The notes under the pieces were generated by a model, which made no database searches, was not told the DNA's origin, and saw nothing but the letters and a program-made list of their open reading frames with translations. A program made the position numbers and the translations under genes. A stretch of 64,000 nucleotides of DNA, taken from positions 160,358 through 224,357 of IMG/VR virus record IMGVR_UViG_3300036770_006893; one strand, written 5' to 3'. Below are positions 43,452-57,693 of the stretch, piece by piece; the first letter of the stretch is position 1; each line of letters starts with the position of its first letter.

Positions 43452-43479
43452 AGTATACATCGTCAATCCGCGTTGTCAA
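43452..43479 (-). promoter_or_regulatory. Early promoter for rIIA
   Basis: TTGACA-N16-TATACT. Confidence 0.75.
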
Positions 43480-43804
43480 CATTACGCTTTCTGGATTGCA
43501 AGATTTCTTTCGCTTTCATGGTTACGAAAGTTCCAGCAAATGCACCTAAAAATAGCGGAATAATATATAGCATATTTTTGCTAAAGCTTACTACCCCAAA
43601 TGCGGATAGTGAAGTTATCATACCAGCCATAAAAGACGACATTAAATTTTGTCTAGATTCTATGCAAAGAATATAATATGCATAAAACATATCTAGTATA
43701 AAATATGTTATAAATATCAGTAATGCTGAATTCGCATCAAATTGATTCGTCTGTATCATTTTCCCAAAAATTATCGTCTTTTGATGCCCAATTTTCTTCT
43801 TCAT
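43463..43804 (-). CDS. Small multi-TM membrane protein
   Basis: Three hydrophobic segments, GAF.GT motif. Confidence 0.55.
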   Translation of the reverse strand: MKKKIGHQKTIIFGKMIQTNQFDANSALLIFITYFILDMFYAYYILCIESRQNLMSSFMAGMITSLSAFGVVSFSKNMLYIIPLFLGAFAGTFVTMKAKEILQSRKRNVDNAD

Positions 43805-44063
43805 AATCTTCTACATCCATATCATCTTCTTCTGCCAATAGAATGGTGAAGTTATTCAAAATTTCTAAAACAATATCTACTTTTGTCATAATTTCAGAAA
43901 CCTCTTTTTTAATAGAGCATATCTCTTTTTTAAGGCTAGATGTTTCTTTTCCAAGATCTGTTACTTGTTTATTTAACATTAAGTCATTTTTATCAGACTC
44001 CCGAGATAGTTGATCCAATTTTTTGTATAAGTCATCTATATTTTTAGACATTGTTTTCTCCAT
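43737..44063 (-). CDS. Coiled-coil hypothetical protein
   Basis: Heptad pattern, acidic tail. Confidence 0.5.
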   Translation of the reverse strand: MEKTMSKNIDDLYKKLDQLSRESDKNDLMLNKQVTDLGKETSSLKKEICSIKKEVSEIMTKVDIVLEILNNFTILLAEEDDMDVEDYEEENWASKDDNFWENDTDESI

Positions 44064-44100
44064 CGGGATTTATAGACGCAAAATAAATATACACCATCTT

Positions 44101-44634
44101 CTATGCGAAACACTTACACTTGTATCGTCTGCAATATGAGCATTTTGGGCCTGGGTCTGGATTTCCCCAAGCATTAGATATTCCATTAAAACTTTCTTTT
44201 CCAGTATCTATGCAGACAACTTTCTTTTTTCGGCCTCTTTTTACTGTTCCAACATTATACCAATGACAGTCCCAAAATTTTAAGCCGGTTTTGAATTCTA
44301 TATCATTGACTAAATTTTGAATGTCCCGCATACTAATTTCCGTAGCAGGATCATATAGCGTGGCTAATTCGGTAACGAACCCCCAGTTGCTAGGATCGTC
44401 AAAATATATGTCGTTATGATAAGCAAATTTTAACTTACATATTTCTGTGTATATTTTTGGAGCAAGATCGAATCGTGATAATTTTTTTTGTATTGAGTGT
44501 GCTGCTATGGCCTTTTTTTTGTTTTTGAATTCTTTGAATACTAGATTGGATTGATTTTTAATTGGATAAACCTGACAAGATCCTCCTTCATCACTCCAGT
44601 CTGAACAGTCTATTAGATACTGATTATTAATCAT
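44101..44634 (-). CDS. Protein-kinase-like fold enzyme
   Basis: EGGSCQVY (Gly-loop), VFK, LAPK.Y, G.VTE, D.H..N, CID.G. Confidence 0.7.
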   Translation of the reverse strand: MINNQYLIDCSDWSDEGGSCQVYPIKNQSNLVFKEFKNKKKAIAAHSIQKKLSRFDLAPKIYTEICKLKFAYHNDIYFDDPSNWGFVTELATLYDPATEISMRDIQNLVNDIEFKTGLKFWDCHWYNVGTVKRGRKKKVVCIDTGKESFNGISNAWGNPDPGPKCSYCRRYKCKCFA

Positions 44635-44956
44635 TAGATCTATCTACTATTTTGTTACCCATTATTTCTTCAGAAATATTGATAGCTTCTTTCAAATCTT
44701 TAGTGTCTGTAATTTTAAGCGGACCTTTCGGAATGTCTATCCAATAAGATGCATAGACCCCGTAGAAAACATCTCCCAAAGAATGATCGTGCATCAAAAA
44801 ATCTACAGCATCATGGAAAATGTCTAAATACCAATCGCCGTGTTCGTCTTGAACTTCTTTTATCGTATCGACTAAAATAAAGCGAAAATTTGGATGCTTA
44901 AAGTCCGGGTCACTATGCACAATACCTCGATAAAATCTATTTGGTAAACTTACCAT
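44627..44956 (-). CDS. Hypothetical protein
   Basis: ORF in operon. Confidence 0.5.
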   Translation of the reverse strand: MVSLPNRFYRGIVHSDPDFKHPNFRFILVDTIKEVQDEHGDWYLDIFHDAVDFLMHDHSLGDVFYGVYASYWIDIPKGPLKITDTKDLKEAINISEEIMGNKIVDRSND

Positions 44957-45311
44957 ATTGGTTATATCCTTTCCAGTCTCCAGCTAAAAATTCTTTTTTG
45001 TTAGAGTAAAGAGGAACCACTTTTTCATCTGGGTTGTATGGATTGTCAATAAGTCTTAGATCATATAGGTCTTGTCTATCGTTGACTAGACCATAAGCAA
45101 CAGGATGCTTGAATATATCTATGATCTTAGTATATTTTTGCTTTAGGTCGCTTAGTTCTTTCTCACAGCTTAACCATCTTTGAGAATCTGCGCTATCTGC
45201 TCTAAGTTTTTTTAACTCATCTTTAGCATTATTTACTACAAAACGATCAGCACCACTGGCCCAAGCAAATTCAATAATAAAGTCGATAGGGTTAGAGTGT
45301 TCGTTCATCAA
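44937..45311 (-). CDS. Hypothetical protein
   Basis: ORF in operon. Confidence 0.5.
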   Translation of the reverse strand: MMNEHSNPIDFIIEFAWASGADRFVVNNAKDELKKLRADSADSQRWLSCEKELSDLKQKYTKIIDIFKHPVAYGLVNDRQDLYDLRLIDNPYNPDEKVVPLYSNKKEFLAGDWKGYNQYGKFTK

Positions 45312-45526
45312 ATGAATCCTATTCTAGTTTTTTCTGTTGTAACAACAGCCTCTATATCAGAAGAGTTAAAGATTTCGGTACAATATGATCGACCGCTCCA
45401 CCACCCACACTTATAAGTGATTGCATGATTAGGACCAATACTAACACAAATGATAGTCCCGTAAACATCATCTGTCAACTTAACCCTGGTTCCAATATTG
45501 TAAAATTCTAGAGAGTTTTTGCTCAT
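45308..45526 (-). CDS. Small hypothetical protein (start MSKNSLEF)
   Basis: AAGGA RBS before ATG 45526; the longer ORF call overlaps tRNA-Leu. Confidence 0.55.
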   Translation of the reverse strand: MSKNSLEFYNIGTRVKLTDDVYGTIICVSIGPNHAITYKCGWWSGRSYCTEIFNSSDIEAVVTTEKTRIGFI

Positions 45527-45565
45527 TTGTTTTCCTTGTTCTTTAAAAAGGTTTTGGTGTAATAA

Positions 45566-45648
45566 TCTCACGGGAGGGACTCGAACCCTCAAGACTAAAA
45601 GTCGAGGCATTTTAAGTGCCTTGCGTATACCAGTTTCGCCACCGTGAG
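45566..45648 (-). tRNA. tRNA-Leu (anticodon UAA), CCA not encoded
   Basis: Acceptor CTCACGG/CCGTGAG+A, D-arm GCG-AAACTGGTATA-CGC, anticodon AGGCA-CTTAAAA-TGCCT, long V-arm, T-arm GAGGG-TTCGAGT-CCCTC. Confidence 0.95.
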
Positions 45649-45655
45649 GTATGAT

Positions 45656-46087
45656 ATGAATCCTAAACGAAAGTGTTCCTGTTGTCAAGTGTACAAAGAC
45701 GAATCATTTTTTGCATTTAAAAATAGAAAATTAGGTAGATTACAAACTAGATGTAAAAAGTGTCAATCAAAATATCATAAACAACATTATAAATCAAACA
45801 AAGAAACATATTGCGAAAGAGCCAGAGCCAATAATCCAAGATATAAACAAAGAAATCAACAATTTATTAATGAATATAAAGCCAAAAAGGGTTGTAAATT
45901 CTGTCAAGAAAATACTCCTGTATGTTTGGATTTTCATCATGTTGACCCAAACATTAAAGATTGGAATATATCAGTAATGTCTAGGAGTGCTAGTTCAATA
46001 GCAACAATTAAAAATGAAATTGATAAGTGCATAGTAATCTGTTCTAATTGTCATAGAAAACTTCATGCTGGAATAATAAAAGAATAA
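45656..46087 (+). CDS. Free-standing HNH endonuclease
   Basis: C..C Zn fingers; GC..C......LDFHH.DP...E..KC...C.NCHR..H. Confidence 0.85.
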   Translation: MNPKRKCSCCQVYKDESFFAFKNRKLGRLQTRCKKCQSKYHKQHYKSNKETYCERARANNPRYKQRNQQFINEYKAKKGCKFCQENTPVCLDFHHVDPNIKDWNISVMSRSASSIATIKNEIDKCIVICSNCHRKLHAGIIKE

Positions 46088-46177
46088 AAAAAGCAATCGA
46101 CTACAACAATCAAAAGTTTGAGGTTGATTATTTGTGTGCCTCTCCCATTATAACCGTTGTAGCCGACTACCTTTTTT
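46086..46177 (-). ncRNA. Long G-U-rich stem-loop (3' UTR element / sRNA / terminator) with an antisense loop
   Basis: 21 contiguous pairs (7 G-U) between 46151-46171 and 46092-46112, flanked by A/U runs. Confidence 0.75.
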
Positions 46178-46190
46178 ATAGTATTGACTC

Positions 46191-46472
46191 TCAGCCGTTG
46201 TTATGAGCCTTGAGGCGACGAACAAACTCAGCCATAGCCTCAACATTATCTACTGTCTTGGTTGGCTTCGCACGTTCCATAGAAGGAAGTTCGATACCCT
46301 TCTGGGCCAGAGCGGCCTTGGTGCGAGCATAACGAGCCATAGTACTGGCAACCTTTTGACCAGTCTTACTAGCGATCTCAGCATAAGTCTTAGACGAGTA
46401 AACCGCTTCAAGAAATGCCTCATCGCTGCAACGAACACGGGTCTGCTTCTCAACATTACTAATTTCTGCCAT
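46191..46472 (-). CDS. Small HTH-like DNA-binding protein
   Basis: MAEISN... after TTTGGAGG RBS; TYAEIASKTGQKVASTMAR HTH-like segment. Confidence 0.6.
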   Translation of the reverse strand: MAEISNVEKQTRVRCSDEAFLEAVYSSKTYAEIASKTGQKVASTMARYARTKAALAQKGIELPSMERAKPTKTVDNVEAMAEFVRRLKAHNNG

Positions 46473-46549
46473 GATAATCAACCTCCAAATTAAGTTACCT
46501 TACTTCACGGTTTCGGCCACACGACCTCAAACACCCGTGTTGTATTAGC

Positions 46550-46577
46550 ATTATATCCTATGTATCGGCGTTGTCAA
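46550..46577 (-). promoter_or_regulatory. Early promoter with GCCGATA spacer motif
   Basis: TTGACA-ACGCCGATACATAGGA-TATAAT. Confidence 0.8.
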
Positions 46578-46596
46578 TACCCAAACTTGAAAAATT

Positions 46597-46779
46597 CTAC
46601 TCAGACGGCAAAATAATTGCGAGTAATATATATATCCACAATAATAGACTGCCGGTTGCAAAAAATCCTAGTACAAATAAAATTCTAACTAAAGAAACTT
46701 CGATACCCATATATTCAGAAATGCCTCCGCAAACACCAAAAATATTTTTATGTTTTTGACTTTTAGTTAATCTTTTCAT
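46597..46779 (-). CDS. pspC: PspC-domain membrane protein
   Basis: MKRL.KS...K.I.GVCGGI.EY.GI...LVRI.......Y......P. Confidence 0.85.
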   Translation of the reverse strand: MKRLTKSQKHKNIFGVCGGISEYMGIEVSLVRILFVLGFFATGSLLLWIYILLAIILPSE

Positions 46780-46927
46780 TTCTAGAACCTTCTTTTTCTA
46801 TTAAGGCTTCTTGTTTTATTTGATCTTCTACATCTTTAATAATTTTTTGCAGATATTTTATATAAGAAATCATTTGTTCATCTGTTGCATCATCTGGCAG
46901 TGGTATTATTTCCATATTATGTACGTT

Positions 46928-47725
46928 CTAAAAATAGTAATTATTCATTAGGGCCATTAATCTATCTACACCAATCGATTGACTTACGCAGCTTTTTAAC
47001 ATCCATAAATGGATAATATTGCTTTGTTTTAAAACACTAAAAACGTCCCAAAAATTTTTACAGTGGAAGGTATCTATTAATGTTGTTGGTGGTATGGGAA
47101 TACTATCAATCAACACCATCTGTTCTATAAAAACACTTTTAACCCATGAGGAGTCTGGCGTATTAATATGATTGACCAAGCCACTATCAAATGTATCTAA
47201 GTTATTTATTGTTGTTGATATAGTCCTTTTAATTGCGTTATTAATAATTTGTGTATCGCTGCCACCAAACACAGCACAATTATAACTGTCTAGTTCAGAT
47301 GTTTGAGTGTTATATATTTTACTATATAAGGCGTGGTCAACCTTAAGTATATTTTTGATCCATGGTTCTATATGTAGTGTTATAAGGCCAGTATTGATTT
47401 TATCAGCTAATATATTTTCTATTAAAAATAGATCTATGTCAATATGAACATATGGTCTTTCATGCTTACAGCACGAAACCAATTTAGTACCAGACCAGAA
47501 GTTGTTTTTAATAATATCTTTGTATTCATCTTCATCTATACAGATTATATCGTCGTAAGGGTTTTCTTTAAAAGAATCTTTTAGGTCTGGAGATGTATAT
47601 AGAACAACAGTATATTTATGCTTTTTAAGGAATTTACAAGAAACTAAAGATTGACTAGCAACAAGGCTAATATTTGATCTTATATTATTGCTTAAATTGC
47701 TAAAATAGCTCTGTATAATTTCCAT
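46928..47725 (-). CDS. DUF6734-like (putative glycosyltransferase) protein
   Basis: LYT, FW...KL......PYVHID.D.F, N...FGG.D, F.EQ, H. Confidence 0.6.
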   Translation of the reverse strand: MEIIQSYFSNLSNNIRSNISLVASQSLVSCKFLKKHKYTVVLYTSPDLKDSFKENPYDDIICIDEDEYKDIIKNNFWSGTKLVSCCKHERPYVHIDIDLFLIENILADKINTGLITLHIEPWIKNILKVDHALYSKIYNTQTSELDSYNCAVFGGSDTQIINNAIKRTISTTINNLDTFDSGLVNHINTPDSSWVKSVFIEQMVLIDSIPIPPTTLIDTFHCKNFWDVFSVLKQSNIIHLWMLKSCVSQSIGVDRLMALMNNYYF

Positions 47726-47726
47726 T

Positions 47727-48068
47727 TTATTTAATTAATTTTGTTATGCAAATATTTTCAAACGTATTATTGCCTTTATCTAAAATAGCCTTTGTAGCCA
47801 GATCTTTAGAGATAGATGCTAGGTTTTTTTCATACACCATAATTTCCTTGAGTGTATTTATGCAATAACTAACAGAGCTTGTAGTAAAATTACTGTAGTG
47901 TTGGTATGTAGATATATTTGCTTCTATTTTTTCTATAATATTATTAACAATCAAAATTATCTCTGGACTCTCTTTGTATTTAACAGATAGTCTTTGTGAG
48001 ATCCATCTTAAATAATTAAGATCGTTTGCGTCTAGCATATTTATTTTTCTTTTTTTCTTTTTTACCAA
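47727..48068 (-). CDS. Hypothetical protein
   Basis: ORF. Confidence 0.45.
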   Translation of the reverse strand: MVKKKKRKINMLDANDLNYLRWISQRLSVKYKESPEIILIVNNIIEKIEANISTYQHYSNFTTSSVSYCINTLKEIMVYEKNLASISKDLATKAILDKGNNTFENICITKLIK

Positions 48069-48155
48069 AAATGTTTTCGTAATTTTTACTCCACGTATTA
48101 TAGTCTACACTTTTTGGCCTTCTCTTATCGCCTTTTCCATTTTGGCTCATATTCA

Positions 48156-48869
48156 TCACTCCAGTACAAATGACCAATAACGAGAATCGTCTTTCTTTTG
48201 AAGATTATCCCAATACAAGCACCGAGCAATATATGGTGGAATTTTATATTTTCCACAATTAATAACCCAATGACGTTCCATTTTCTTGTAAGAATCGGTT
48301 CCGATCTTGCTCTTATTATATTTCAAATGTTCCATATCGTAAAGGCGAAGTTGATGAATATCTCCACACAATACTCTTGCTTCATTAGGATGAATCATTT
48401 CCAGAGCAAAACTAACTTTAGCCAGACCAATACCATTGATCTTATTAACAATAGCATCACGCTTTTTAACGTGGCCTTTTTTAGTTGTAAAATAAAAGTC
48501 TTTAGGGTTTGTCCAAAATTTAGTAGCAAAATCCCAAATATACTTGGTGCGATTATTGTGTAGACCAACACCACTCTTATGCAGTTTTTCTCTCAGAATA
48601 TTTTCGTTATCAATCCATTCGTCAAAATTCTTAATGGCATTATAGCCCTTAACATTGCCTTGCCAAGTAGTATGTACGCTTGTGTATGCAAAAAGATATC
48701 TACGAAAAATATCTTCCACATTCTGTGGACGCACACTCTCCCAATATTCCTTGTATGAAACTACCTTGTCTCTAGGAAAAGTAGCAAAGAAAATATCAGC
48801 CTTGGTCTTATCAAGAGTAGTATTCTGAACCGGAATTACAGTATTCTCAACAATCATGGTTTTCTCCAA
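48156..48869 (-). CDS. HhH-family DNA glycosylase/AP lyase (Ogg-like)
   Basis: R..IV..I.GIG..K.SF.L......D.H helix-hairpin-helix with the Lys/Asp pair. Confidence 0.7.
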   Translation of the reverse strand: MEKTMIVENTVIPVQNTTLDKTKADIFFATFPRDKVVSYKEYWESVRPQNVEDIFRRYLFAYTSVHTTWQGNVKGYNAIKNFDEWIDNENILREKLHKSGVGLHNNRTKYIWDFATKFWTNPKDFYFTTKKGHVKKRDAIVNKINGIGLAKVSFALEMIHPNEARVLCGDIHQLRLYDMEHLKYNKSKIGTDSYKKMERHWVINCGKYKIPPYIARCLYWDNLQKKDDSRYWSFVLE

Positions 48870-48882
48870 TGGTTATGCTACG

Positions 48883-48911
48883 ATTCTACACTACGAGTAT
48901 CGACTTGTCAA
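48883..48911 (-). promoter_or_regulatory. Early promoter
   Basis: TTGACA-AGTCGATACTCGTAGTG-TAGAAT. Confidence 0.75.
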
Positions 48912-48922
48912 GACTCGTTTCT

Positions 48923-50239
48923 TTAGACGGTTCTCGCAGACCCATGTAGAATTTTAAACGTAGGAAATCGCAAACTGATACCACCATCTTGGTTTTTAGT
49001 TTCCTCAAAATACTGCACAGTTATAATCTGTCCAAGAATCTTATTAGGGTTCCGATAAAATTCCTGACGTTGTTCTATAGTGAAACCGCTACCAACTCTC
49101 ACAAGATGATCCTTATGCTTAATAGTAACGCAACTCAACATAGTTTCTTCACACTCAGCACCATTCTTTACATAACGAAATGGCCCCATTTCTGTGTCGA
49201 TTACTTCATACTCGTCATCAAAAAACTTCTTAACTTTCAACAGGTCTTTGCTACGCTTGCCTTTATATGGCTCGTCTGCTCGTAGCATTACTCCTTCCCA
49301 ACCATAATCAGCCGCTTCTTTGACCCATTCTTGAAAATGCTCGTCATTATGAATCAATTCTTGTTCAAGCAGAGTAAGGCACGGACATTCATTTTTGGTC
49401 ATAATCTCTGTAAGATTTGCTAACCGAATAGAATATGGACGATTCTTTTCACCCTTCTTGCTATAAAACTCGTCGTGAGAGATCATATCAAAAATTTTGA
49501 ATGACGGATTAGGAATAGTATGATCCTTCTTTTTAAGTTGTTTCATAATCCCTTGGAAATCCTCATTACCATCATCATCTACAAGACACAGTTCACCATC
49601 AAATATTACATCAGTAACCCCCAAAGCCTTAATCCCACGGCTAACAACACCAAGAGTTTCAAAACTCTTTCCTGTGCGGGAATAAAAAGTAGAGTCCCCA
49701 TTACCATCAACAATACAAATACATCTAGCACCATCAATTTTTCTGCTAACATACCAATTATCCTTCCATTCTACAAGTTTAGGCTCATACTTATCTGCCA
49801 GAGCAACACTAAACTCTGGAATATGGTCAGGAATAGCCTTGTTGATAATCTTGTCACCAGCACGGGTTTTCAAGTCCTTATCAATAATGCAATAAATAAG
49901 TTCCTCAATATTGTCTTTATTTGACTGACTATCAATAAAAGTATGGACTGCTCCAATAGCATCGTGACCAGTAATCTTTCGACTCTTTAGGGCATCAAGT
50001 AGATCGAAGAAATTCTTATAGGATTTTCCTCTCAAAGAATTCTTCTTTTTCAGATTGTCGCTAGTAACATTATACTGCCACAAAGGGTGATAGGTGTAAA
50101 GAAGAATTTTTTTAGCAAAATTTGCAGCCTCAGAATTATGATTACAATAATCTTCAATAATACCTTGCTTATCAATAGTGCTGCTAGTAGCCCTAAGATC
50201 ACGAACCATACCCCAAACATAATTAAAATCGTGAATCAT
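48923..50239 (-). CDS. lig: ATP-dependent DNA ligase
   Basis: KIDG.R (motif I), FDGE, IFD, EGVMLR, Y.GKRS..LLK.K, VGSGF, SLRFP; start placed at MIHDF after GGAGA. Confidence 0.93.
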   Translation of the reverse strand: MIHDFNYVWGMVRDLRATSSTIDKQGIIEDYCNHNSEAANFAKKILLYTYHPLWQYNVTSDNLKKKNSLRGKSYKNFFDLLDALKSRKITGHDAIGAVHTFIDSQSNKDNIEELIYCIIDKDLKTRAGDKIINKAIPDHIPEFSVALADKYEPKLVEWKDNWYVSRKIDGARCICIVDGNGDSTFYSRTGKSFETLGVVSRGIKALGVTDVIFDGELCLVDDDGNEDFQGIMKQLKKKDHTIPNPSFKIFDMISHDEFYSKKGEKNRPYSIRLANLTEIMTKNECPCLTLLEQELIHNDEHFQEWVKEAADYGWEGVMLRADEPYKGKRSKDLLKVKKFFDDEYEVIDTEMGPFRYVKNGAECEETMLSCVTIKHKDHLVRVGSGFTIEQRQEFYRNPNKILGQIITVQYFEETKNQDGGISLRFPTFKILHGSARTV

Positions 50240-50271
50240 CCAAAGTTTCTCCGGTTTCCTGTGTTCAAGCC

Positions 50272-50300
50272 AGTATATCATATACTATCGGCGTTGTCAA
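50272..50300 (-). promoter_or_regulatory. Early promoter
   Basis: TTGACA-ACGCCGATAGTATATGA-TATACT. Confidence 0.8.
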
Positions 50301-50314
50301 GCACATTTCTTTAG

Positions 50315-50707
50315 TTAGTCTTGATTAAATTTTAATTCAACCAGCTTTTGTGCTGAATCAACCAACCTATCCCAATTTTTGTTCACATATTCTGGTGGTC
50401 CTCCAATTTTTGCTACAATTTCTGGAGCTGATTCTAGGGGAACCATTTCTATAGCATCCCAAGGACAAACCTTTAAATCATATGGATTAGATTTTTTTTG
50501 AGGTATCCGGACACAAACTTCACACCCAACACATTTATCAAGATCTATTTCGCACCAACTTTGTAAGTTTCCTAGATTATCATTTTGTTGTATTTTGATT
50601 ATGCAATCCACGGGACAAACTTCCAAACAAGCCCCACAGCCTGTACAATTATCGGCATTTATAATTGCTAATTCTTTTGGTAGTTTTTTTCTTGAAGATT
50701 GTTTCAT
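50315..50707 (-). CDS. 2x[4Fe-4S] ferredoxin
   Basis: CTGCGAC..VCP and CVGCEVC...CPW. Confidence 0.88.
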   Translation of the reverse strand: MKQSSRKKLPKELAIINADNCTGCGACLEVCPVDCIIKIQQNDNLGNLQSWCEIDLDKCVGCEVCVRIPQKKSNPYDLKVCPWDAIEMVPLESAPEIVAKIGGPPEYVNKNWDRLVDSAQKLVELKFNQD

Positions 50708-50869
50708 TTATATTGATTGCTATTTTTAAGGGCTTCTAAAACCATTTCGACATCTTCTTTACTATATGGGGTTTCTATACCTAATTGTTTATGCATACCC
50801 ATTTGTACATATAATATATTTAAAGCATCTATAACAATTTGTAAATCGTTTGGTTCTAGATAATAGAAG

Positions 50870-51082
50870 TTACTTTTTAGTTTCACGACTAAACCTCTTG
50901 CTTAATTTTTTAACTAAATCACTGCCTGCTGTTGGGAAAAAACATGGTAATATAGAATGTATTATTAATAGTAATCCGGCCAATAAACAACAGATACCAT
51001 AAAATAAAGCAAAGCCCAAATGCTCTATATAAGTCATATTATTTTCTTTAAGATGATCTTTCCATTTTTGTGTTATTCTCAT
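50870..51082 (-). CDS. DUF6356-like small membrane protein
   Basis: HL....MTY.EH..FA...IH...P..F....SD. Confidence 0.6.
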   Translation of the reverse strand: MRITQKWKDHLKENNMTYIEHLGFALFYGICCLLAGLLLIIHSILPCFFPTAGSDLVKKLSKRFSRETKK

Positions 51083-51096
51083 AGACGTTTTACTGC

Positions 51097-51855
51097 CTAC
51101 TTTTTAAGTTCGGTTTTGGATTCTTTTATCCATTCTAAAAATTTAGAAACTCTGGTATGCCCAGATTCTTCTCCATACTTTGACATTGGAGATTTACCAA
51201 TAGTCATTACACACGAATTTATTCCTGCTAGTTTACCTTCTATAAAAAGACCCCCACCACTATCTCCACTTCCTATCATATACTCTAATATTGTATGATC
51301 TTTTGCTCCATATCGCGATGGAGAACATAGCAGCATATCTTTTTCTATTCCATCGATCACATTGGATCCTGCTCTTAATTTATTATCTGATTTATATATA
51401 CCGGTATTGAAATTACCAGTTAGTCCCCAGCCAGCAATTGAGGCTACTTTACCAACTTCGTTTTCATCTTCATATAATGGAGGAAAATGCTCTTGATCAA
51501 AACCGCTTTCAGAATATCCTAATGCTATATCAGCCACTCCAAATCGGCCATCAAAATCTTTGTGTACAATTATATTGTCTACAATAAACTGTTTGTCTCC
51601 TATTTTTACATAACAAGTTTTGTATCCTTTAACAACGTGACCGGCAGTTAGTACAAAATGTTTTTCAATAATAACTCCAGAAGCACAAAATTTTGTATCA
51701 TCTTGGTATGTGCCACAAAGCCTAACAACACAATAAAATTTGCTACCAAAATCTAAATATTTTTGATCTGGTATATTTGGATCTATAGTTCCGCTATAAG
51801 ATAGAGAGCATAGTCCTAAAAGAGAAAACAAAAAAAGCTTTTTAAGTATAAACAT
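51097..51855 (-). CDS. Secreted trypsin-like (S1) serine protease
   Basis: Signal peptide; LTAGH, DIAL, GDSGG. Confidence 0.88.
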   Translation of the reverse strand: MFILKKLFLFSLLGLCSLSYSGTIDPNIPDQKYLDFGSKFYCVVRLCGTYQDDTKFCASGVIIEKHFVLTAGHVVKGYKTCYVKIGDKQFIVDNIIVHKDFDGRFGVADIALGYSESGFDQEHFPPLYEDENEVGKVASIAGWGLTGNFNTGIYKSDNKLRAGSNVIDGIEKDMLLCSPSRYGAKDHTILEYMIGSGDSGGGLFIEGKLAGINSCVMTIGKSPMSKYGEESGHTRVSKFLEWIKESKTELKK

Positions 51856-51892
51856 GATAAGCCCTCCTTTAAAAGCGGCTTAGTATAATACA

Positions 51893-52240
51893 CTATTTTT
51901 GTCTATTTTTAGACATAATTAAATAGTTAGCAGCTTTAATTATGCCGTCTAGATTATCTCCCAACTTTCCCAATCCCGTATTACAAGGCTCACAGAGCCA
52001 ACCCCTAAAACTATCGTCACTATGATCGTGATCTAAACACCATTTAAGAGGAATTTTTCCACAACATTCACAAACTTCTGGTTTTGGCGGAGCTTCTTTA
52101 TGTAGCTGATTTCTTACTTTGCTGTGTTTTTTAACGCAACTTCTACATCTGCTATCCAAATTATCTTTGTACATACTGTGCTTGGGAAAACTTTTATGGT
52201 TTTTTCGTTTGCCGCAGTAAGTACAAATTTTTCTAGGCAT
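51893..52240 (-). CDS. Endonuclease VII-like (His-Me finger) endonuclease
   Basis: C..C...LDHDH....RG.LC..CN..LG...D. Confidence 0.85.
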   Translation of the reverse strand: MPRKICTYCGKRKNHKSFPKHSMYKDNLDSRCRSCVKKHSKVRNQLHKEAPPKPEVCECCGKIPLKWCLDHDHSDDSFRGWLCEPCNTGLGKLGDNLDGIIKAANYLIMSKNRQK

Positions 52241-52242
52241 AC

Positions 52243-52595
52243 TGGACGAGAGGGGAGTCGAACCCCTGTCCTATCATATTTCTAATTACATCTTCTACAA
52301 GTTTATTCTGTTCATAAGTTTTGAGAAAGATTAAAGAACAAACAACATTCATCTTTCCGTACCAACTAGTCTCAGGCTAGAACCCGTTGGCTATTCTAGC
52401 AGCCGAAGGATTTTACGACAATCTTTTGAACGCTACCTTCATCGCTTTCTAAGATTGTTGCTACCTTTTATTAAGCAGCAAGGGCTAACTGAGTATTGCC
52501 AGTTACAGCATTTGGTAGATTTTTAAAGTGGCCTTTCCACCAACCACTACTTGCCAATATAATCTTCTTTATGTAGTCGAAACCTTTACTCGCCC
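52243..52595 (-). ncRNA. ssrA: tmRNA, tag (A)GNTQLALAA*
   Basis: Acceptor GGGCGAG/CTCGTCC+A with G3-U; T-arm AGGGG-TTCGACT-CCCCT; pk1 AGTGGTT/GGCCACT plus GGTGGA/TCTACC; TAACT precedes the resume codon; tag ORF 52471-52500; 353 nt. Confidence 0.93.
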
Positions 52596-52868
52596 TAATT
52601 ATTATACACAAAATCTTTGTTTTTCAAATGTTCCAAAGCCTCTAACTTCAGATACAAATATTCAAAAAATACTTTGTACGTTGCTTTTTCTTGTCTCAAT
52701 AATTTTATCTCTTCGTATTGAATAAGATTAAAACCTAAAGACATAGATAGAATACCAATTATTATTACATAATATGGCATATGTTTTGAACGATTTGTCA
52801 TGAATTTTGTTGCCTGTTAATCGAAAATGGTGTATGATATTATCTAGTTATAGAAAGGAGATTCGATT

Positions 52869-53360
52869 ATGAATCAATGCGTCAACTGTTCCAAAGAAAC
52901 AAGTAATCCAAGGTTTTGTTCAAGATCATGTGGTGTGTCATACAATAATCGAATAAAACCTAAAAGAATTAAAAGGATGAGAACTTGTAAATTTTGTAAA
53001 AATCAATTTCATTCTCTTCATAGTTATAATCAAAAATATTGTAATAAACAATGCTTACAAAATCATAGAGAATACAATATTCAAACTAATGGTTTTGGTG
53101 AAGGTCATTACCACAATAATTCTATAAGAAAATATCTAGTTAAAAAGCATGGTAATAATTGTATGATTTGCGGACAGTCAGGAAATGATTGGAATGGTAA
53201 ACCTATAACTCTTATTGTGGATCATATTGATGGAAAATCTAATAATAATAAACTAGATAATCTTCGTATTGTTTGTCCTAATTGCGACTGTCAATTACCA
53301 ACCTATAAAGCAAAAAATAAAGGAAATAGTTCTCGTAAATATTACATAGTCCAAAAATAA
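52869..53360 (+). CDS. Free-standing HNH endonuclease
   Basis: FCSRSC/YCNKQC Zn repeats; C..CG...W.GK...L.VDHIDG...NN...NLR..CPNC. Confidence 0.88.
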   Translation: MNQCVNCSKETSNPRFCSRSCGVSYNNRIKPKRIKRMRTCKFCKNQFHSLHSYNQKYCNKQCLQNHREYNIQTNGFGEGHYHNNSIRKYLVKKHGNNCMICGQSGNDWNGKPITLIVDHIDGKSNNNKLDNLRIVCPNCDCQLPTYKAKNKGNSSRKYYIVQK

Positions 53361-53440
53361 TACTCCTGCTTGGAATCGAACCAAGTCCCCTTTCGGATTA
53401 CCTTATAAGAGTAATTGCCGGGAACCACCGGCACAGGAGC
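53361..53440 (-). tRNA. tRNA-Ile (anticodon UAU) with extended variable arm, CCA not encoded
   Basis: Acceptor GCTCCTG/CAGGAGT+A, D-arm CCGG-TGGTTC-CCGG, anticodon TTACT-CTTATAA-GGTAA, V-region TCCGAAAGGGGA, T-arm CTTGG-TTCGATT-CCAAG. Confidence 0.85.
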
Positions 53441-53449
53441 GTATGTTGT

Positions 53450-53478
53450 ATTATACACTATCGACCGATCTCTGTCAA
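53450..53478 (-). promoter_or_regulatory. Early promoter for tRNA-Ile
   Basis: TTGACA-GAGATCGGTCGATAGTG-TATAAT. Confidence 0.75.
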
Positions 53479-54024
53479 CTCTCCAGTTTCGTTTTTCAAT
53501 TTTTCCACAAAGTTTCTATAAATTCCCATAACAATACCACTAGTTGTTCCCACGTTGAGAGAACGAACGCTACCATAATTAGGAATAGTAAGGATAATAT
53601 CACACTTATCCAAAATGAAATCTGATAGTCCTTTATTTTCTTCTCCAAATAAAAATATAGGTTGAGTAGTATTGTAGTATTGATAATCAAAGAGATTAAC
53701 GGTTTTGTGACTATATTCGGGAACGTTATTTTCAATAGCAATAACAGTCCTACCAGGGCATTGTGAAATAAAAGACTGTTCATCTTTATGGTGATACATT
53801 GGTGTGTAGTGATGGGTTCCTACGCTGCCTCTTTTATCCCATTTCTTTTTACCGATATAATGGACACTACTAAACCCAAAAAAGTTTGCGTTACGAACCA
53901 GTGTACTAAGATTAAAATCTCCGCTAATATTAATCATGGCAACACTCGCTGGTATGCTGTTACTAATACAGTATTCAGCAATATCAGGAATAGCATATTC
54001 TTTTAGGCTATCAATCACGTTCAT
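53458..54024 (-). CDS. SpoU/TrmH-family RNA 2'-O-methyltransferase
   Basis: N..TL.R.A..FG, FGEE..GL, IP..GSVRSLNV. Confidence 0.85.
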   Translation of the reverse strand: MNVIDSLKEYAIPDIAEYCISNSIPASVAMINISGDFNLSTLVRNANFFGFSSVHYIGKKKWDKRGSVGTHHYTPMYHHKDEQSFISQCPGRTVIAIENNVPEYSHKTVNLFDYQYYNTTQPIFLFGEENKGLSDFILDKCDIILTIPNYGSVRSLNVGTTSGIVMGIYRNFVEKLKNETGELTEIGR

Positions 54025-54165
54025 TTTTCAATTTTTCTTTGTAAGCTTTCCAATTTTTTTTCCAACCTAAATATTAGAGAATATGTGTCTGAGCATTTTT
54101 TACAATAATCAGAAACTATATATTCTCTAGCCTCCCATATATCTTCTTTGATCTTTGATATGCGT

Positions 54166-54555
54166 TCAAGAATTTTTTCTTTTTCGTTTTCGCTTAGGTT
54201 TTGGTTGGTCATTTTGAATAGTCTCCTTATGCCAAAATACCATTTCGTTTAACTCATCGTCCCAAGCACATTCTACAATGTCTCTTGCTGCTAGTTTAGC
54301 AAGCCCGGTGTTGTGGATCATTGTCGCTGTTTCATGAAAAATAATTTCGTTTTGTTTTTCGTTCAAAAGAGGTCTATTATTAGCGTCAAAGCCCAAACAA
54401 TAAGACTCAACTAAACCAATCATTTGGCCAATGCTAATATAGTCATCCAAATTGTCTTGGTGGCTATGTTCACTAATGCTTTTTGCTGCTGCTTCTCTCA
54501 TTTGAGAAACATAACCATTAATGTCAGTAATAGCATAAACAGTATCGTCCTGCAT
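54166..54555 (-). CDS. Hypothetical protein (C-terminus resembles 37728..38159)
   Basis: LAKLAA.D.VECAWD...NEMVFW. Confidence 0.55.
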   Translation of the reverse strand: MQDDTVYAITDINGYVSQMREAAAKSISEHSHQDNLDDYISIGQMIGLVESYCLGFDANNRPLLNEKQNEIIFHETATMIHNTGLAKLAARDIVECAWDDELNEMVFWHKETIQNDQPKPKRKRKRKNS

Positions 54556-54572
54556 TATTAATCTCCAATAAG

Positions 54573-54851
54573 TTATTTAATAAACTTAGATACACCCTGA
54601 CCGGAATCTTCTGATATTTTATCAAGAATTCGGCTAATTGTATATTGCATATTTACTTCTCCTCTATTTAACCATCGGCTATTACTATCTAGTGCCGTTA
54701 TAATTTGAGGAATCCAGTGCTGATACGCTACATCAAATTCTTCTGGAAAATAAGTCTTCAATATTCTCTGTATATGAAATATAGAACTGTCTATTTGGTC
54801 TCTATAATCCATAAGTAGGTTCAATTGATCTTTTTGATCCTGGCTTAACAT
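54573..54851 (-). CDS. Hypothetical protein
   Basis: ORF in operon. Confidence 0.5.
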   Translation of the reverse strand: MLSQDQKDQLNLLMDYRDQIDSSIFHIQRILKTYFPEEFDVAYQHWIPQIITALDSNSRWLNRGEVNMQYTISRILDKISEDSGQGVSKFIK

Positions 54852-55285
54852 TAAACTAATGCCTTATCGTATTTAGGATTATATGCAGAATCTTTCTTTT
54901 TCATTTTGAGAATTTTATGTTTAACTTTCCAAACTCCAGTTTCAGGATTTTGACAATCTGGCCCCATATAAATATGAGCAAATCCAGCGTTCTTATCAAT
55001 ACCCCAAGCGCAGATGCCTTTATCATCAATCTTTTCTACAACAAATCTTCCTCTATATCCCATAGGGACAAGTTCTCCATTGTGTAGAAAATATGGGCCG
55101 CCACCTACCTTGATCTTATCGCCCGGCTCAAGATCCTTCCAGTTAAAGTCTCTAATAATTTTATGTGTTCGCTTTTCTTTGTTGTTGATTTTAAAAGAAA
55201 AAACATGATTGCAATTCTTACAAACATAGGCTCGCGGCCCAACCATGTTAGAACAATTCGGACAAGTCTTTTTGCCTTTGGGCAT
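54851..55285 (-). CDS. Zn-ribbon hypothetical protein
   Basis: K.CP.C...VG.RA..C..C.H.F; ACAGGAG RBS. Confidence 0.6.
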   Translation of the reverse strand: MPKGKKTCPNCSNMVGPRAYVCKNCNHVFSFKINNKEKRTHKIIRDFNWKDLEPGDKIKVGGGPYFLHNGELVPMGYRGRFVVEKIDDKGICAWGIDKNAGFAHIYMGPDCQNPETGVWKVKHKILKMKKKDSAYNPKYDKALV

Positions 55286-55315
55286 TTCTAATCTCCTGTG
55301 TCAGTGAATATGCTA

Positions 55316-55343
55316 AGTATACTACCGTTATCGGCGTTGTCAA
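55316..55343 (-). promoter_or_regulatory. Early promoter
   Basis: TTGACA-ACGCCGATAACGGTAG-TATACT. Confidence 0.8.
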
Positions 55344-55756
55344 GCGGTTTTCTTTAGACCGTCCACAATTGTGAGTTTTCCAGGCTCATAATGACAAAAA
55401 TAACTAGAATGAATTCTTCTCTTAATTAGGTTATTTTCTTCTATTTCGATATATACATTAATTCTGTATCTATTTTCCCAAACATTTATAATTTTGGTCA
55501 TTAGATGACGTTTAGGTTTCTCTACTTGCTTAAACAGAAGGTTTTCAATTTCAAGATCCATTATTTTCTCCAGAATCAAATTTTATGTAAATTCCCTTTT
55601 CCTCTGTGTCATTAAACTCTATTAGATCACCATTAAATAATCCACCATAAGCATTGTCGTAAACCTTAACATCTTGTTGCCAATCAAATTTACCAAATGC
55701 TTTCATATCATTTGCTTTTTGATGAAGAAAATTATATAGATCAAGCCAGTTCATTA

Positions 55757-55975
55757 TTATCTAGCCCTCCGGTTTGCTCTATCTAATTTGCGAATAGTTT
55801 CTCTAGCATTAGCAGGAACCATAACCAAACTGGGTGCTGTTTTGTGTCCCCAATCCATAAATCCAACAGCACGATTCTCTACACTACAATCTTTACAGAT
55901 AATCTTACGGCCAGTTTCAACAAGAAATTCATAACGATCAAAATCAATATCGTTTTGACAATAAATACAATTCAT
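55757..55975 (-). CDS. DksA/TraR-type C4 zinc finger protein
   Basis: C..C...I...R.E.L......C..C; GGAGG RBS. Confidence 0.6.
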   Translation of the reverse strand: MNCIYCQNDIDFDRYEFLVETGRKIICKDCSVENRAVGFMDWGHKTAPSLVMVPANARETIRKLDRANRRAR

Positions 55976-55995
55976 TGGTATCCTCCGTTGATTGG

Positions 55996-56023
55996 ATTAT
56001 ACCATACTCATCGGCACTGTCAA
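55996..56023 (-). promoter_or_regulatory. Early promoter
   Basis: TTGACA-GTGCCGATGAGTATGG-TATAAT. Confidence 0.75.
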
Positions 56024-56455
56024 CCGGGTTGCTTGAATCGGATTTCCTATACTATCAACAAAGTCTCCGTTGTCAGTACTATAATAAACATCATTCAAGC
56101 CAACGCTGCTTAATAACTTGCTGCAATTTTCACAAGGTTTACTACCCAGAATTAATCCTTTTCTATTAATTCGCATAACAACAATACTCCAGTTAGGATC
56201 AATAGTATTATAACGACCCAGCAATTCAGAAATAAGCCTAGACTCACTATGATAGTAGGGAAACTCTTTATATTTAGGAAGATTAAAGTCTTCGCCTATT
56301 CTGTAGGCTCCAGCATGGGTTTTGATAGGATTGTTTTGGGTGAAACAAATTAGTTTTGTTCCATCATAACAACCAGCATAATGGTAACATCGAATACTTT
56401 TAGTCGGATTCCAATTCTTGTATGCTCGTCTGATCGTTTTGTTTATTATTTTCAT
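55997..56455 (-). CDS. Cytidine/dCMP deaminase-fold protein
   Basis: HSE ... SKPC..C Zn motif, VYYST. Confidence 0.75.
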   Translation of the reverse strand: MKIINKTIRRAYKNWNPTKSIRCYHYAGCYDGTKLICFTQNNPIKTHAGAYRIGEDFNLPKYKEFPYYHSESRLISELLGRYNTIDPNWSIVVMRINRKGLILGSKPCENCSKLLSSVGLNDVYYSTDNGDFVDSIGNPIQATRLTVPMSMV

Positions 56456-56587
56456 TTTTTATCCAAAGATCATCAGCCATTTCGATATCATAGTAAGTAG
56501 GTGTAGTTAGTGGAATTTTTTCTGGTTCTTTATTTCTTGGATTGTCTGTTAGTGGTATTTTTTTTGGTTCTTTCATAGCGTATTTCC

Positions 56588-56734
56588 TTATTTATTTGCT
56601 AGTATATATAGTCCAACATTAGCAAAAGCATATCCGATATATGTTATTAGCATACCAGTATTGCCTTTGTATCCTTGCTCGCAAGCAACGTACAAATAGC
56701 AGCAACCAGTAAAAGCAATTAACCAAGCACTCAT
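56588..56734 (-). CDS. 48-aa conserved phage membrane protein (not in the ORF track)
   Basis: MSAWLIAFTGCCYLYVACEQGYKGNTGMLITYIGYAFANVGLYILANK; ATGA overlap with uvsE. Confidence 0.6.
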   Translation of the reverse strand: MSAWLIAFTGCCYLYVACEQGYKGNTGMLITYIGYAFANVGLYILANK

Positions 56735-57648
56735 GCGATTACCCCTTTACAGATTTCTTCATGATGTTCTATAGCATAGTCTTTCATTTTGAGTTCCATA
56801 TCAACATCAAATTCTAATCCATAGTTATTAAACATATTTTCAGCATAATCAGCATGAGCACGGGGATTATTTCCCGGCCTACTTTCGCTGTAGTGAAAAA
56901 GCGGTCGATATCCTTGCCATGTCAAATAGCAAGACTCAAGTGCTTCTTGTTCATTTAAATCATTAGGATTGCACTTGTGATGAAGATAATCAAATGTAAT
57001 AGGTATATTTGTGGCAGGGTGAAAATGTTCGATAAGTTCTTTCACACTCCAGCAGTTAACTTTGTCATCATTTTCAATAACAAGTCTGCTCCTGCAATTA
57101 GGATCAAGACGATTAAAATTTTGAATAAAACGATCAATGATTTCAGAGTGTGTTCCATTTTTATTATGAACGTGCAGGTTCATCGGGTTGTTATAATTTG
57201 CTTCAAGGCCGATTCTGTCGAAGAAATTGCTGTAGAAGTTAAGTTCTTTGATTGTTTTTTCGACTGCTTTGGGATTGAGAGATGCCAATACATTAAATTC
57301 GCTAGGATGACAAGAAACACGAACCCCAGTATCGGAAATAGTTTGTGAAATATTCTTAAACTCGTTTTGTATGTCATCATAATTAGGCAACTCTTCTAAT
57401 GATACATTTGCCTCATCATATGTTATCAGTGGAAAGATATCACTACTAACACGATATGTATAATTATTTTTGGAGCAATATTTGATAGTTTCATTAGTTG
57501 TTTTGAGGTTGTTTAGAATTCTATCTCCAAGAGTTTGGACCGCCTCTTCTCTGCGTAGGCAATTAAATCTTTTAAAGGTCATGGTTTGATGACCAATACC
57601 CTGTTCTTTAAGTTTAAGGGAAATACAACACAGTCCGTAGCGATTCAT
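56731..57648 (-). CDS. uvsE: UV-damage endonuclease UvsE/UVDE
   Basis: YRVSSD.FP, RVS.HP..FNVL.S, LVIENDD, FD.LHH, HYSE, HADY, E.K.KD. Confidence 0.92.
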   Translation of the reverse strand: MNRYGLCCISLKLKEQGIGHQTMTFKRFNCLRREEAVQTLGDRILNNLKTTNETIKYCSKNNYTYRVSSDIFPLITYDEANVSLEELPNYDDIQNEFKNISQTISDTGVRVSCHPSEFNVLASLNPKAVEKTIKELNFYSNFFDRIGLEANYNNPMNLHVHNKNGTHSEIIDRFIQNFNRLDPNCRSRLVIENDDKVNCWSVKELIEHFHPATNIPITFDYLHHKCNPNDLNEQEALESCYLTWQGYRPLFHYSESRPGNNPRAHADYAENMFNNYGLEFDVDMELKMKDYAIEHHEEICKGVIA

Positions 57649-57665
57649 AGTAAAGCCTCAAGCGT

Positions 57666-57693
57666 AGTATACCTCATCATCGACAAAAGTCAA
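57666..57693 (-). promoter_or_regulatory. Early promoter for uvsE
   Basis: TTGACT-TTTGTCGATGATGAGG-TATACT. Confidence 0.7.

What the first reader, a model, noticed from the sequence alone, without database searches (positions are those of the whole stretch)
43452..57693. Early-promoter family with a conserved G(C/T)CGAT(A/G) box in the spacer
Seen: eight near-consensus TTGAC(A/T)-N16/17-TA(T/G)A(A/C)T promoters (43452, 46550, 48883, 50272, 53450, 55316, 55996, 57666) all contain GNCGATR in the spacer. Three share the identical 15-mer TTGACAACGCCGATA, and five have 16-bp spacers. A CG-rich motif recurring like this in AT-rich DNA is unlikely to be chance. Inference: an operator or activator box, or a host-sigma-specific element. 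The HTH-like protein at 46191-46472, which sits behind one of these promoters and the RNA switch, is a candidate reader, giving a timed early shut-off circuit.
Basis: partly seen in the sequence, partly recalled or inferred. Interest (0 to 1): 0.62.

Follow-up and report, generated by a model that had tools for sequence, protein, structure and literature searches.

The report
Conserved spacer box in phage early promoters
An uncultured 224-kb phage and its many environmental relatives carry a short, one-way sequence box (G-N-CGAT-A/G) inside most of their early promoters; evolution preserves it, so it is probably a binding site for a regulator not yet identified.

Summary
All eight promoters exist, all on the minus strand, and all carry GNCGATR in the spacer. 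A ninth, the rIIB promoter at 40946, carries TCCGATA.

The window is the last 64 kb of a 224,357-bp uncultured phage with rIIA and rIIB genes but no close cultured relative. Genome-wide, 43 strict TTGAC(A/T)-N16-18-TAnAnT sites lie on the minus strand of the early region. Of these, 22 have CGAT in the spacer against 2.25 expected, and four more have it just after the -10.

The box is orientation-specific (CGATA 70, TATCG 2). It usually starts 10-12 nt after the first T of the -35. Orthologous promoters in more than 50 related contigs keep it while neighbouring spacer bases vary.

It was not a general promoter feature in 301 Verrucomicrobiota genomes. The host is unknown and no RNA data exist.

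The 93-aa protein is a plausible helix-turn-helix reader. It is restricted to this clade, highly conserved, and has the box in its own promoter. There is no direct evidence that it binds the box. Whether the box represses or activates is unresolved.

Verdict: a new variant of a known kind, a promoter-embedded regulatory box.

The parts
40946..40974 (-). Promoter inside the 3' end of rIIA, about 195 nt upstream of rIIB. 17-bp spacer, box variant TCCGATA 13 nt from the -35 start.
   Evidence: Conserved in 28 related loci.
43452..43479 (-). rIIA promoter, 16-bp spacer. Box GACGATG (43458-43464) abuts the -10. In some relatives the box sits next to the -35 instead.
45660..45688 (-). Box-less family member (-10 TAGGAT) directly upstream of tRNA-Leu(taa) at 45566-45648.
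46550..46577 (-). Promoter of the 93-aa HTH gene, 16-bp spacer, box GCCGATA (46563-46569).
   Evidence: The box is kept in nearly all of 32 orthologous loci and in three of the five more distant relatives whose HTH-gene promoter could be read.
46507..46538 (-).
   Evidence: 8 pairs, 6 with compensatory changes, none broken in 15 sequences; no Rfam match.
46191..46472 (-). 93-aa predicted HTH protein (HTH93), the candidate reader of the box.
   Evidence: Sigma70_r4_2, 19.5 bits against a cut-off of 25.7. AlphaFold2 pLDDT 73, helices 17-26, 30-37, 41-57 and 74-91; only weak LysR, MarR and TetR DNA-binding-domain matches; 689 homologues; 23 clusters at 50% identity.
48883..48911 (-). Promoter of the Ogg-like glycosylase gene, 17-bp spacer, box GTCGATA (48898-48904).
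   Evidence: CGATA columns show 0-2 variants and the next four spacer columns 3-8, among 15 unique orthologues.
50272..50300 (-). DNA ligase promoter, 17-bp spacer, box GCCGATA (50286-50292). Several orthologues lack the box.
53450..53478 (-). Promoter directly upstream of tRNA-Ile(tat) (53361-53440) and the tmRNA (52240-52595). Box GTCGATA (53459-53465) lies near the -10.
   Evidence: The box is kept at the same place in 4 relatives.
55316..55343 (-). Promoter of a 144-aa ORF, 16-bp spacer, box GCCGATA (55329-55335).
55996..56023 (-). Promoter with consensus hexamers for a 72-aa ORF, 16-bp spacer, box GCCGATG (56009-56015).
57666..57693 (-). UvdE endonuclease promoter (-35 TTGACT), 16-bp spacer, box GTCGATG (57678-57684).

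Best explanation
The box (consensus A-W-G-H-C-G-A-T-R, always on the sense strand) is a clade-specific cis-regulatory site built into about 60% of the sigma-70-type early promoters of this uncultured phage lineage. I think it is most likely the operator of a small sequence-specific DNA-binding protein made by the phage, with the 93-aa HTH protein at 46191-46472 as the leading candidate. Bound inside the region that RNA polymerase covers (about -26 to -13, or at the start site in four promoters), this protein would turn down a defined subset of early promoters, its own included, once it has accumulated. Shown: the promoter family, the box, its non-random occurrence, its orientation and position bias, and its conservation across the clade. 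Inferred: that a protein reads it, which protein, and that the effect is negative.
For: The box is non-random: 22 of 43 spacers against 2.25 expected. Across the clade 109 of 163 unique promoters carry it. It is under purifying selection in orthologous promoters while adjacent spacer bases vary. In noncoding DNA it is almost always coupled to a TTGACA -35. It tolerates several positions: 8-21 nt from the -35 start, moved between -35-proximal and -10-proximal in rIIA promoter orthologues, and 1-2 nt after the -10 in four promoters. That flexibility fits a separate binding protein better than a rigid polymerase contact. The promoters already have consensus -35 hexamers, near-consensus -10 hexamers and 16-17-bp spacers. 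From general knowledge, sites inside such spacers are usually repressor operators. Some orthologues lack the box, so it modulates the promoter and is not essential to it. HTH93 is predicted to be an HTH protein. It is more conserved than rIIA, restricted to this phage clade and transcribed from a box promoter. In the one lineage whose two readable promoters lack the box (L060), the otherwise invariant Arg-Tyr in the putative recognition helix reads Arg-Leu. No other clear DNA-binding family appeared among the 25 families listed (of 48 hit at E<=0.01) for 135 early-region ORFs.
Against: There is no binding, expression or start-site data, and no RNA runs hold this phage. Strict orientation (CGATA 70, TATCG 2) and a preferred position (75% at 10-12 nt) are not needed for simple steric repression. 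They could instead indicate contact with polymerase, or common descent. Promoters with the box have weaker -10 hexamers and fewer TGn motifs (4/24 against 10/19, p=0.02). That looks like compensation for a positive element. The box holds only about 11 bits, which is low for a stand-alone operator. HTH93 co-occurrence is confounded by shared ancestry. A lineage with a truncated 66-aa homologue still has boxes in 4 of 11 promoters, though not in the homologue's own promoter. HTH93 has a long C-terminal helix that could dimerise, whereas the box is a single asymmetric site.
Confidence: 0.4

Rival explanations
1. The box is an extra basal promoter element read directly by the host RNA polymerase holoenzyme. 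The reader could be a lineage-specific sigma or core feature, or polymerase modified or accompanied by an injected phage factor. It would add strength or phage specificity to early promoters, as the phage-specific positions of T4-type early promoters do.
For: The box has strict orientation and a modal position 10-12 nt from the -35 start, with a second cluster in the extended -10 zone. It is always coupled to TTGACA promoters and is never a stand-alone site with its own -10. Promoters with the box have weaker -10 hexamers and fewer TGn motifs, as expected if the box contributes binding energy. T4-like phages are known to have phage-specific early-promoter consensus positions (PMC1524935).
Against: The position ranges from 8 to 21 nt and the box also occurs after the -10. 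The box moves within the spacer between orthologues. About 40% of equally good early promoters lack it. In 301 Verrucomicrobiota genomes no genome had more than 3 full-pattern matches, and in five bins only the phage contigs matched. The true host was not identified, so this test is incomplete.
Confidence: 0.3
2. The box is a binding site for a host transcription factor that the phage uses to couple early expression to host physiology. From memory, Spo0A boxes in phi29 early promoters and NtcA or PhoB sites in cyanophages are examples of this.
For: It is a short asymmetric site inside early promoters and is conserved across a broad phage clade even where HTH93 has diverged to 35-45% identity. 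The sequence loosely resembles the 0A-box TGNCGAA, a resemblance recalled from memory.
Against: No known factor with a GNCGATR site was identified. The host is unknown. The full promoter-plus-box pattern is not enriched in the candidate host genomes searched. This rival does not explain the strict orientation either.
Confidence: 0.15
3. The box has no function of its own. The promoters are copies of one ancestral cassette spread by recombination, like the promoter-early stem-loop cassettes of T4-type phages, and the box is inherited sequence.
For: Three promoters share an identical 15-mer. The genome 23-43 kb subfamily shares extended upstream T-rich sequence. Such cassettes are documented in T4-type phages (PMC2839356 and PMC4122927).
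Against: Among paralogues, only the box is shared in the spacer. Orthologues conserve the box while the neighbouring positions are the most variable in the promoter. The box occurs in two subfamilies with unrelated upstream regions. No terminator-like hairpins lie upstream of the window promoters.
Confidence: 0.05

Closest known systems
Phage-specific early-promoter consensus of T4-like phages (Nolan et al. 2006, PMC1524935)
   Same: Many near-consensus host-sigma promoters sit in front of early genes, tRNA genes and novel ORFs. They carry lineage-specific conserved positions beyond the two hexamers and A/T-rich upstream tracts.
   Different: T4-type promoters have GTTTAC-like -35 elements and no CG-containing spacer box. 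This phage is not a close T4 relative: its terminase is 25% identical to those of Bacillus phages and its polymerase is DnaE-like.
T4 middle promoters: MotA box with AsiA sigma appropriation
   Same: Both involve a short, asymmetric, orientation-specific, phage-specific box upstream of a sigma-70-type -10, read (in T4) by a small phage DNA-binding protein.
   Different: The MotA box is centred at -30 and replaces the -35. Here a perfect TTGACA is retained and the box lies downstream of it. The sequence TGCTT is absent, and no AsiA or MotA C-terminal domain was detected.
Asymmetric operators of phage repressors overlapping promoters (for example P1 C1), and early-promoter repressors of lytic phages (SPO1 TF1, phi29 p4/p6); recalled from memory
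   Same: Multiple dispersed copies of one site lie inside the polymerase footprint of early promoters, and the regulator is made early by the phage.
   Different: Those operators are longer, or binding depends on DNA modification or architecture. Here the site is only about 7 bp, strictly oriented, and its binder is unproven.
Promoter-early stem-loop cassettes (PeSLs) of T4-type phages (PMC2839356, PMC4122927)
   Same: These are repeated early-promoter units with sequence conserved beyond the hexamers within one genome.
   Different: PeSLs pair a terminator stem-loop with the promoter. No such hairpins lie upstream of the window promoters, and conservation here is focused on the box, not on the whole cassette.
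Spacer elements read by RNA polymerase (extended -10 TGn; the 'Z-element' read by the beta-prime zipper); recalled from memory
   Same: These are sequence elements between -35 and -10 that affect promoter use and are orientation-specific.
   Different: Those elements have fixed positions. This box moves by more than 10 bp and can lie after the -10.

Membership tests
Sigma-70-type (-35/-10) bacterial promoter | TTGACA-like -35 and TATAAT-like -10 hexamers separated by 16-18 bp | tested here: met
   ten minus-strand sites in 40-59 kb match at least 11 of 12 hexamer positions. Nine of them belong to the family: the eight claimed plus 40946. No plus-strand site matches that well.
Sigma-70-type (-35/-10) bacterial promoter | Placed upstream of genes in the sense orientation | tested here: met
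   the sites lie 6-70 nt upstream of Shine-Dalgarno and start codons (195 nt for rIIB), or about 10 nt upstream of tRNA genes. All are on the coding strand of the early block.
Sigma-70-type (-35/-10) bacterial promoter | Mapped transcription start site | not testable with these tools
   no RNA run holds this phage.
T4 middle (MotA-dependent) promoter | MotA box (a/t)(a/t)(a/t)TGCTTtA centred at -30 in place of a -35 | tested here: not met
   a consensus TTGACA is present, and the box is GNCGATR and lies downstream of it.
T4 middle (MotA-dependent) promoter | motA and asiA genes in the genome | tested here: not met
   no PF09010 or PF09158 match at E<=1 in the 224-kb record. Divergent analogues cannot be excluded.
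PeSL promoter-terminator cassette | Terminator stem-loop immediately upstream of the early promoter | tested here: not met
   the 8 terminator-like sites in 40-59 kb are no more than the shuffles give, and none lies upstream of a family promoter. The 23-43 kb subfamily, which has T-rich upstream tracts, was not scanned.
Repressor operator overlapping a promoter | A specific site inside the polymerase footprint, repeated at several promoters | tested here: met
Repressor operator overlapping a promoter | A cognate DNA-binding protein that binds the site and lowers transcription | not testable with these tools
   There is only a candidate, HTH93. No DNA-protein modelling or experiment was available.
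Sigma-70 region 4 / LuxR-GerE-type HTH (for HTH93) | Significant match to the family profile | tested here: inconclusive
   PF08281 at 19.5 bits, E=7.6e-4, below the 25.7-bit cut-off; no sequence match in the PDB; best Foldseek E-value 0.27, to HTH DNA-binding domains. Sigma70_r4 clusters appear among low-scoring look-alikes (0.76).
Riboswitch or known cis-regulatory RNA (leader of the HTH93 gene) | Match to a curated RNA family | tested here: not met
   no Rfam match, even at E<=1. A hairpin supported by covariation does exist.

The most novel reading that the evidence does not exclude
HTH93 is a free-standing protein resembling sigma region 4. It reads a -35-like G-N-C core (the box) roughly one helical turn downstream of the true -35, on the face of the DNA that polymerase uses. 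By competing or cooperating with sigma region 4, it reprograms host polymerase at a defined subset of early promoters. This would be a route to early-to-middle switching different from AsiA/MotA sigma appropriation, and one that is widespread in an abundant uncultured clade of jumbo phages from lakes and subsurface waters.
Probability: 0.15. Interest if true: 0.75.

Novelty: new variant of a known kind. Interest (0 to 1): 0.5.

Why it matters
Early promoters are the first point at which a phage takes over its host. A conserved, oriented, CG-containing box inside otherwise textbook sigma-70 promoters marks a regulatory layer that has not been described for this abundant, uncultured phage clade. 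The clade has hundreds of near-identical HTH93 homologues in public metagenomes.

If a phage protein reads the box, the pair is a compact, portable promoter-plus-regulator module and a new example of early-gene timing without AsiA and MotA. If polymerase reads it, it points to a host-specific promoter element and could help identify the host.

Either way the question can be tested without culturing the phage, because the promoters are close to the E. coli consensus and the candidate protein has only 93 residues.

Tried and rejected
- **Cultured relatives.** Nucleotide search of the phage collection found no match. Protein searches with rIIA, the polymerase and the terminase found only distant hits of 25-37% identity.
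- **T4-like assignment.** The Gp23 Pfam search found nothing, but the tool warned that this search rang nowhere, so absence is not shown. Terminase, portal and polymerase hits argue against a close T4 relationship.
- **Host identification.** HTH93-bearing contigs are binned in MAGs labelled Terrimicrobiaceae, Thermoplasmatales, Chitinophagia and Flavobacteriales, plus an unclassified bin. These are mutually inconsistent, so they were rejected as host evidence. A DUF1559/N_methyl gene in a distant relative hints at a PVC-group host, but it is absent from this genome.
- **Middle-type promoters.** A search for promoters with the box and a -10 but no TTGACA found none convincing among intergenic CGATA sites.
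- **Expression data.** No RNA runs were found, only DNA contigs from subsurface, soil and marsh metagenomes.
- **Structure of HTH93.** Foldseek against the PDB gave no significant match. The Atlas look-alikes are leads only.
- **Literature.** A search for a described freshwater jumbo-phage clade with such promoters found nothing relevant.
- The analysis was redone from the stored files.


Full report
**What the window is.** The window is bases 160358-224357 of a 224,357-bp IMG/VR virus record with 35.8% GC. It encodes rIIA (40778-43420, minus strand), rIIB (39891-40751), an ATP-dependent DNA ligase, a UvdE endonuclease, an Ogg-like glycosylase and a trypsin-like protease. It also encodes two tRNAs and a tmRNA.

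It is not a close T4 relative. The terminase and portal give only weak PHROG hits, and the polymerase is DnaE-like. The best cultured terminase match is 25% identical, in Bacillus phages. There is no nucleotide match in the phage collection.

Small minus-strand genes fill the record's first 43 kb and its last 24 kb. The early region therefore runs across the record ends.

**Check of the observation.** All eight sites exist at the stated coordinates, but on the minus strand (11 matches against 0.52 expected).
- Each holds GNCGATR in its spacer.
- The identical 15-mer occurs exactly three times in the genome.
- Five spacers are 16 bp and three are 17 bp.
- A ninth member at 40946-40974, the rIIB promoter, has TCCGATA.
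- A box-less member at 45660-45688 drives tRNA-Leu.
- In 40-59 kb, ten minus-strand sites and no plus-strand site match at least 11 of 12 hexamer positions.

**Extent in the genome.** There are 43 strict TTGAC(A/T)-N16-18-TAnAnT sites on the minus strand of the early region.
- Twenty-two have CGAT in the spacer, against a shuffle mean of 2.25 and a maximum of 9.
- CGATA occurs 18 times against 0.68 expected.
- The C of CGAT lies 10-12 nt from the first T of the -35 in 18 of 24 occurrences. A few lie next to the -10.
- Four promoters without a spacer box carry (C/T)CGATATA one or two bases after the -10.
- There is no enrichment upstream of the -35 (7 observed, about 5 expected).
- In noncoding DNA, sense-strand CGATA is almost always preceded by a TTGACA-like hexamer. 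I found no class with the box and a -10 but no -35.
- None of the few TTGACA-type sites outside the early region has the box.

**Extent in relatives.** A search with rIIA returned 46 related IMG/VR loci at 53-100% identity. Further loci came from HTH93 homologues.
- Of 163 unique promoters from these loci plus the genome, 109 have CGAT in the spacer.
- CGATA occurs in 70 and its reverse complement TATCG in 2.
- The flanks give the consensus A-W-G-H-CGAT-R.
- None of the opposite-strand matches in these loci has the box.

Orthologous promoters keep the box while neighbouring bases change. In 15 unique versions of the glycosylase promoter, the CGATA columns show 0-2 variants and the next four spacer columns show 3-8.

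The rIIA promoter box lies against the -10 in most relatives but next to the -35 in others. Some orthologues of the ligase and glycosylase promoters lack it. The box is therefore selected, mobile within the promoter and dispensable. That is the behaviour of a modulatory site.

It occurs in two subfamilies with unrelated upstream sequence, one T-rich (genome 23-43 kb) and one A-rich (the window). No terminator hairpins precede the window promoters. Simple cassette copying of the PeSL kind (PMC2839356, PMC4122927) therefore does not explain it.

**Is it a host promoter feature?** The host could not be identified.
- HTH93-bearing contigs are binned in MAGs of four unrelated taxa.
- In those five bins the full promoter-plus-box pattern matches only the phage contigs.
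- A distant relative carries a DUF1559/N_methyl gene typical of Planctomycetes and Verrucomicrobia (the family's distribution is from memory).
- In 301 Verrucomicrobiota genomes, 58 had any match and none had more than three.

The box is thus not a general promoter feature there. The true host remains untested.

**The candidate reader.** The ORF at 46191-46472 encodes a 93-aa protein.
- It gives a sub-threshold Sigma70_r4_2 match and has no sequence relative in the PDB.
- The AlphaFold2 model (pLDDT 73) has a three-helix HTH (residues 17-57) and a separate C-terminal helix (74-91).
- Foldseek finds only weak matches to LysR, MarR and TetR DNA-binding domains. Atlas look-alikes are small HTH proteins.
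- It has 689 homologues, and the best 120 are all at least 82% identical. Yet there are only 23 clusters at 50% identity among 1.8 billion representatives.
- It is therefore abundant, restricted to this clade and more conserved than rIIA.
- Its own promoter has the box in nearly all relatives, including lineages where the protein is only 35-45% identical.

In one lineage (L060) the two readable promoters lack the box, and the otherwise invariant Arg-Tyr of the putative recognition helix reads Arg-Leu. A lineage with a truncated 66-aa homologue has boxes in 4 of 11 promoters, but not in the homologue's own promoter.

A Pfam scan of 135 early-region ORFs hit 48 families. None of the 25 that the tool lists is a clear DNA-binding family. 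All of this is consistent with HTH93 reading the box, but shared ancestry confounds it.

**Sign of the effect.** The evidence points both ways.
- For repression: the promoters need no help, since they have consensus -35 hexamers, near-consensus -10 hexamers and optimal spacers. The site lies inside the polymerase footprint at several alternative positions. The candidate regulator would autoregulate.
- For a positive role, or direct reading by polymerase: the orientation is strict and the position is preferred. Promoters with the box use TAGAAT or TATACT where those without use TATAAT. In this genome TGn is present in 4 of 24 promoters with the box against 10 of 19 without (p=0.02).

My probabilities are: phage-encoded operator 0.40, polymerase-read element 0.30, host-factor site 0.15, inherited passenger sequence 0.05.

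**The 'RNA switch'.** The leader of the HTH93 gene forms a two-tier hairpin at 46507-46538. It has 8 pairs, 6 of them with compensatory changes, and none is broken in 15 relatives. It matches no Rfam family. It is a real structured leader, but nothing shows that it switches.

**Comparison and novelty.** Phage-specific early-promoter consensus features are known in T4-like phages (PMC1524935). So are promoter-embedded boxes read by phage proteins, such as the T4 MotA box. The membership tests for MotA-type promoters and PeSL cassettes fail.

This is a new variant of a known kind: a short, oriented, CG-containing box downstream of an intact -35, in an uncultured jumbo-phage clade. No expression data exist, so every functional statement is inference.

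Noticed in passing
window 52240-52595 (-), 53361-53440 (-): A phage-encoded one-piece tmRNA (Rfam RF00023, 120 bits; tag peptide GNTQLALAA) lies just downstream of tRNA-Ile(tat). Both sit behind the box promoter at 53450-53478.
   Followed up: partly
window 45566-45648 (-) and 45660-45688 (-): tRNA-Leu(taa) has its own promoter of the same family but without the box (-10 TAGGAT). An orthologous box-less promoter is present in relative L005.
   Followed up: partly
window 46507-46538 (-): The leader of the 93-aa HTH gene has a conserved nested hairpin with 6 of 8 pairs supported by compensatory changes. It is followed by an invariant Shine-Dalgarno and start region. No Rfam family matches.
   Followed up: yes
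genome 33366, 37475, 38994, 42388 (minus strand; outside the window): Four early promoters lack a spacer box but carry (C/T)CGATATA 1-2 nt after the -10. Three of them share TTCAAG right after the -35 and are followed by long purine-rich AGAGAAAG-type leaders.
   Followed up: partly
genome-wide early promoters (logo, positions 35-38 after the -35 start): Many family members share a start-site motif GCATCA about 5-10 nt after the -10. There are two different upstream A/T-rich contexts: TTTTGTGGATTTTTT in genome 23-43 kb and CTAAAGAAA in the window.
   Followed up: no
genome 123-200 kb, minus strand: ATAAATA, which resembles the T4 late promoter TATAAATA, occurs upstream of 7 of 26 genes with intergenic gaps in the replication-gene block. 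This suggests a second, phage-directed promoter class.
   Followed up: no
early-region ORF starts: Seven early genes share the start context GCCAAAATG, without an obvious Shine-Dalgarno sequence.
   Followed up: no
genome 79162-94965 (+) and window 1647-7283 (-): There are very large ORFs of 5267 aa and 1878 aa. Neither was characterised.
   Followed up: no
L057 12479-13489 (+): A distant relative of the phage carries a gene with N_methyl and SBP_bac_10 (DUF1559) domains. From memory, this family is typical of Planctomycetes and Verrucomicrobia, so it is a weak hint at the host. The gene is absent from this genome.
   Followed up: partly
early region, genome 0-44 kb and window 43-64 kb: Early ORFs include ThyX, Hsp20, a 4Fe-4S ferredoxin, a SpoU-type methylase, DUF932 and a Kyanoviridae Gp96-like protein. 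This set of auxiliary genes is reminiscent of cyanophages.
   Followed up: no
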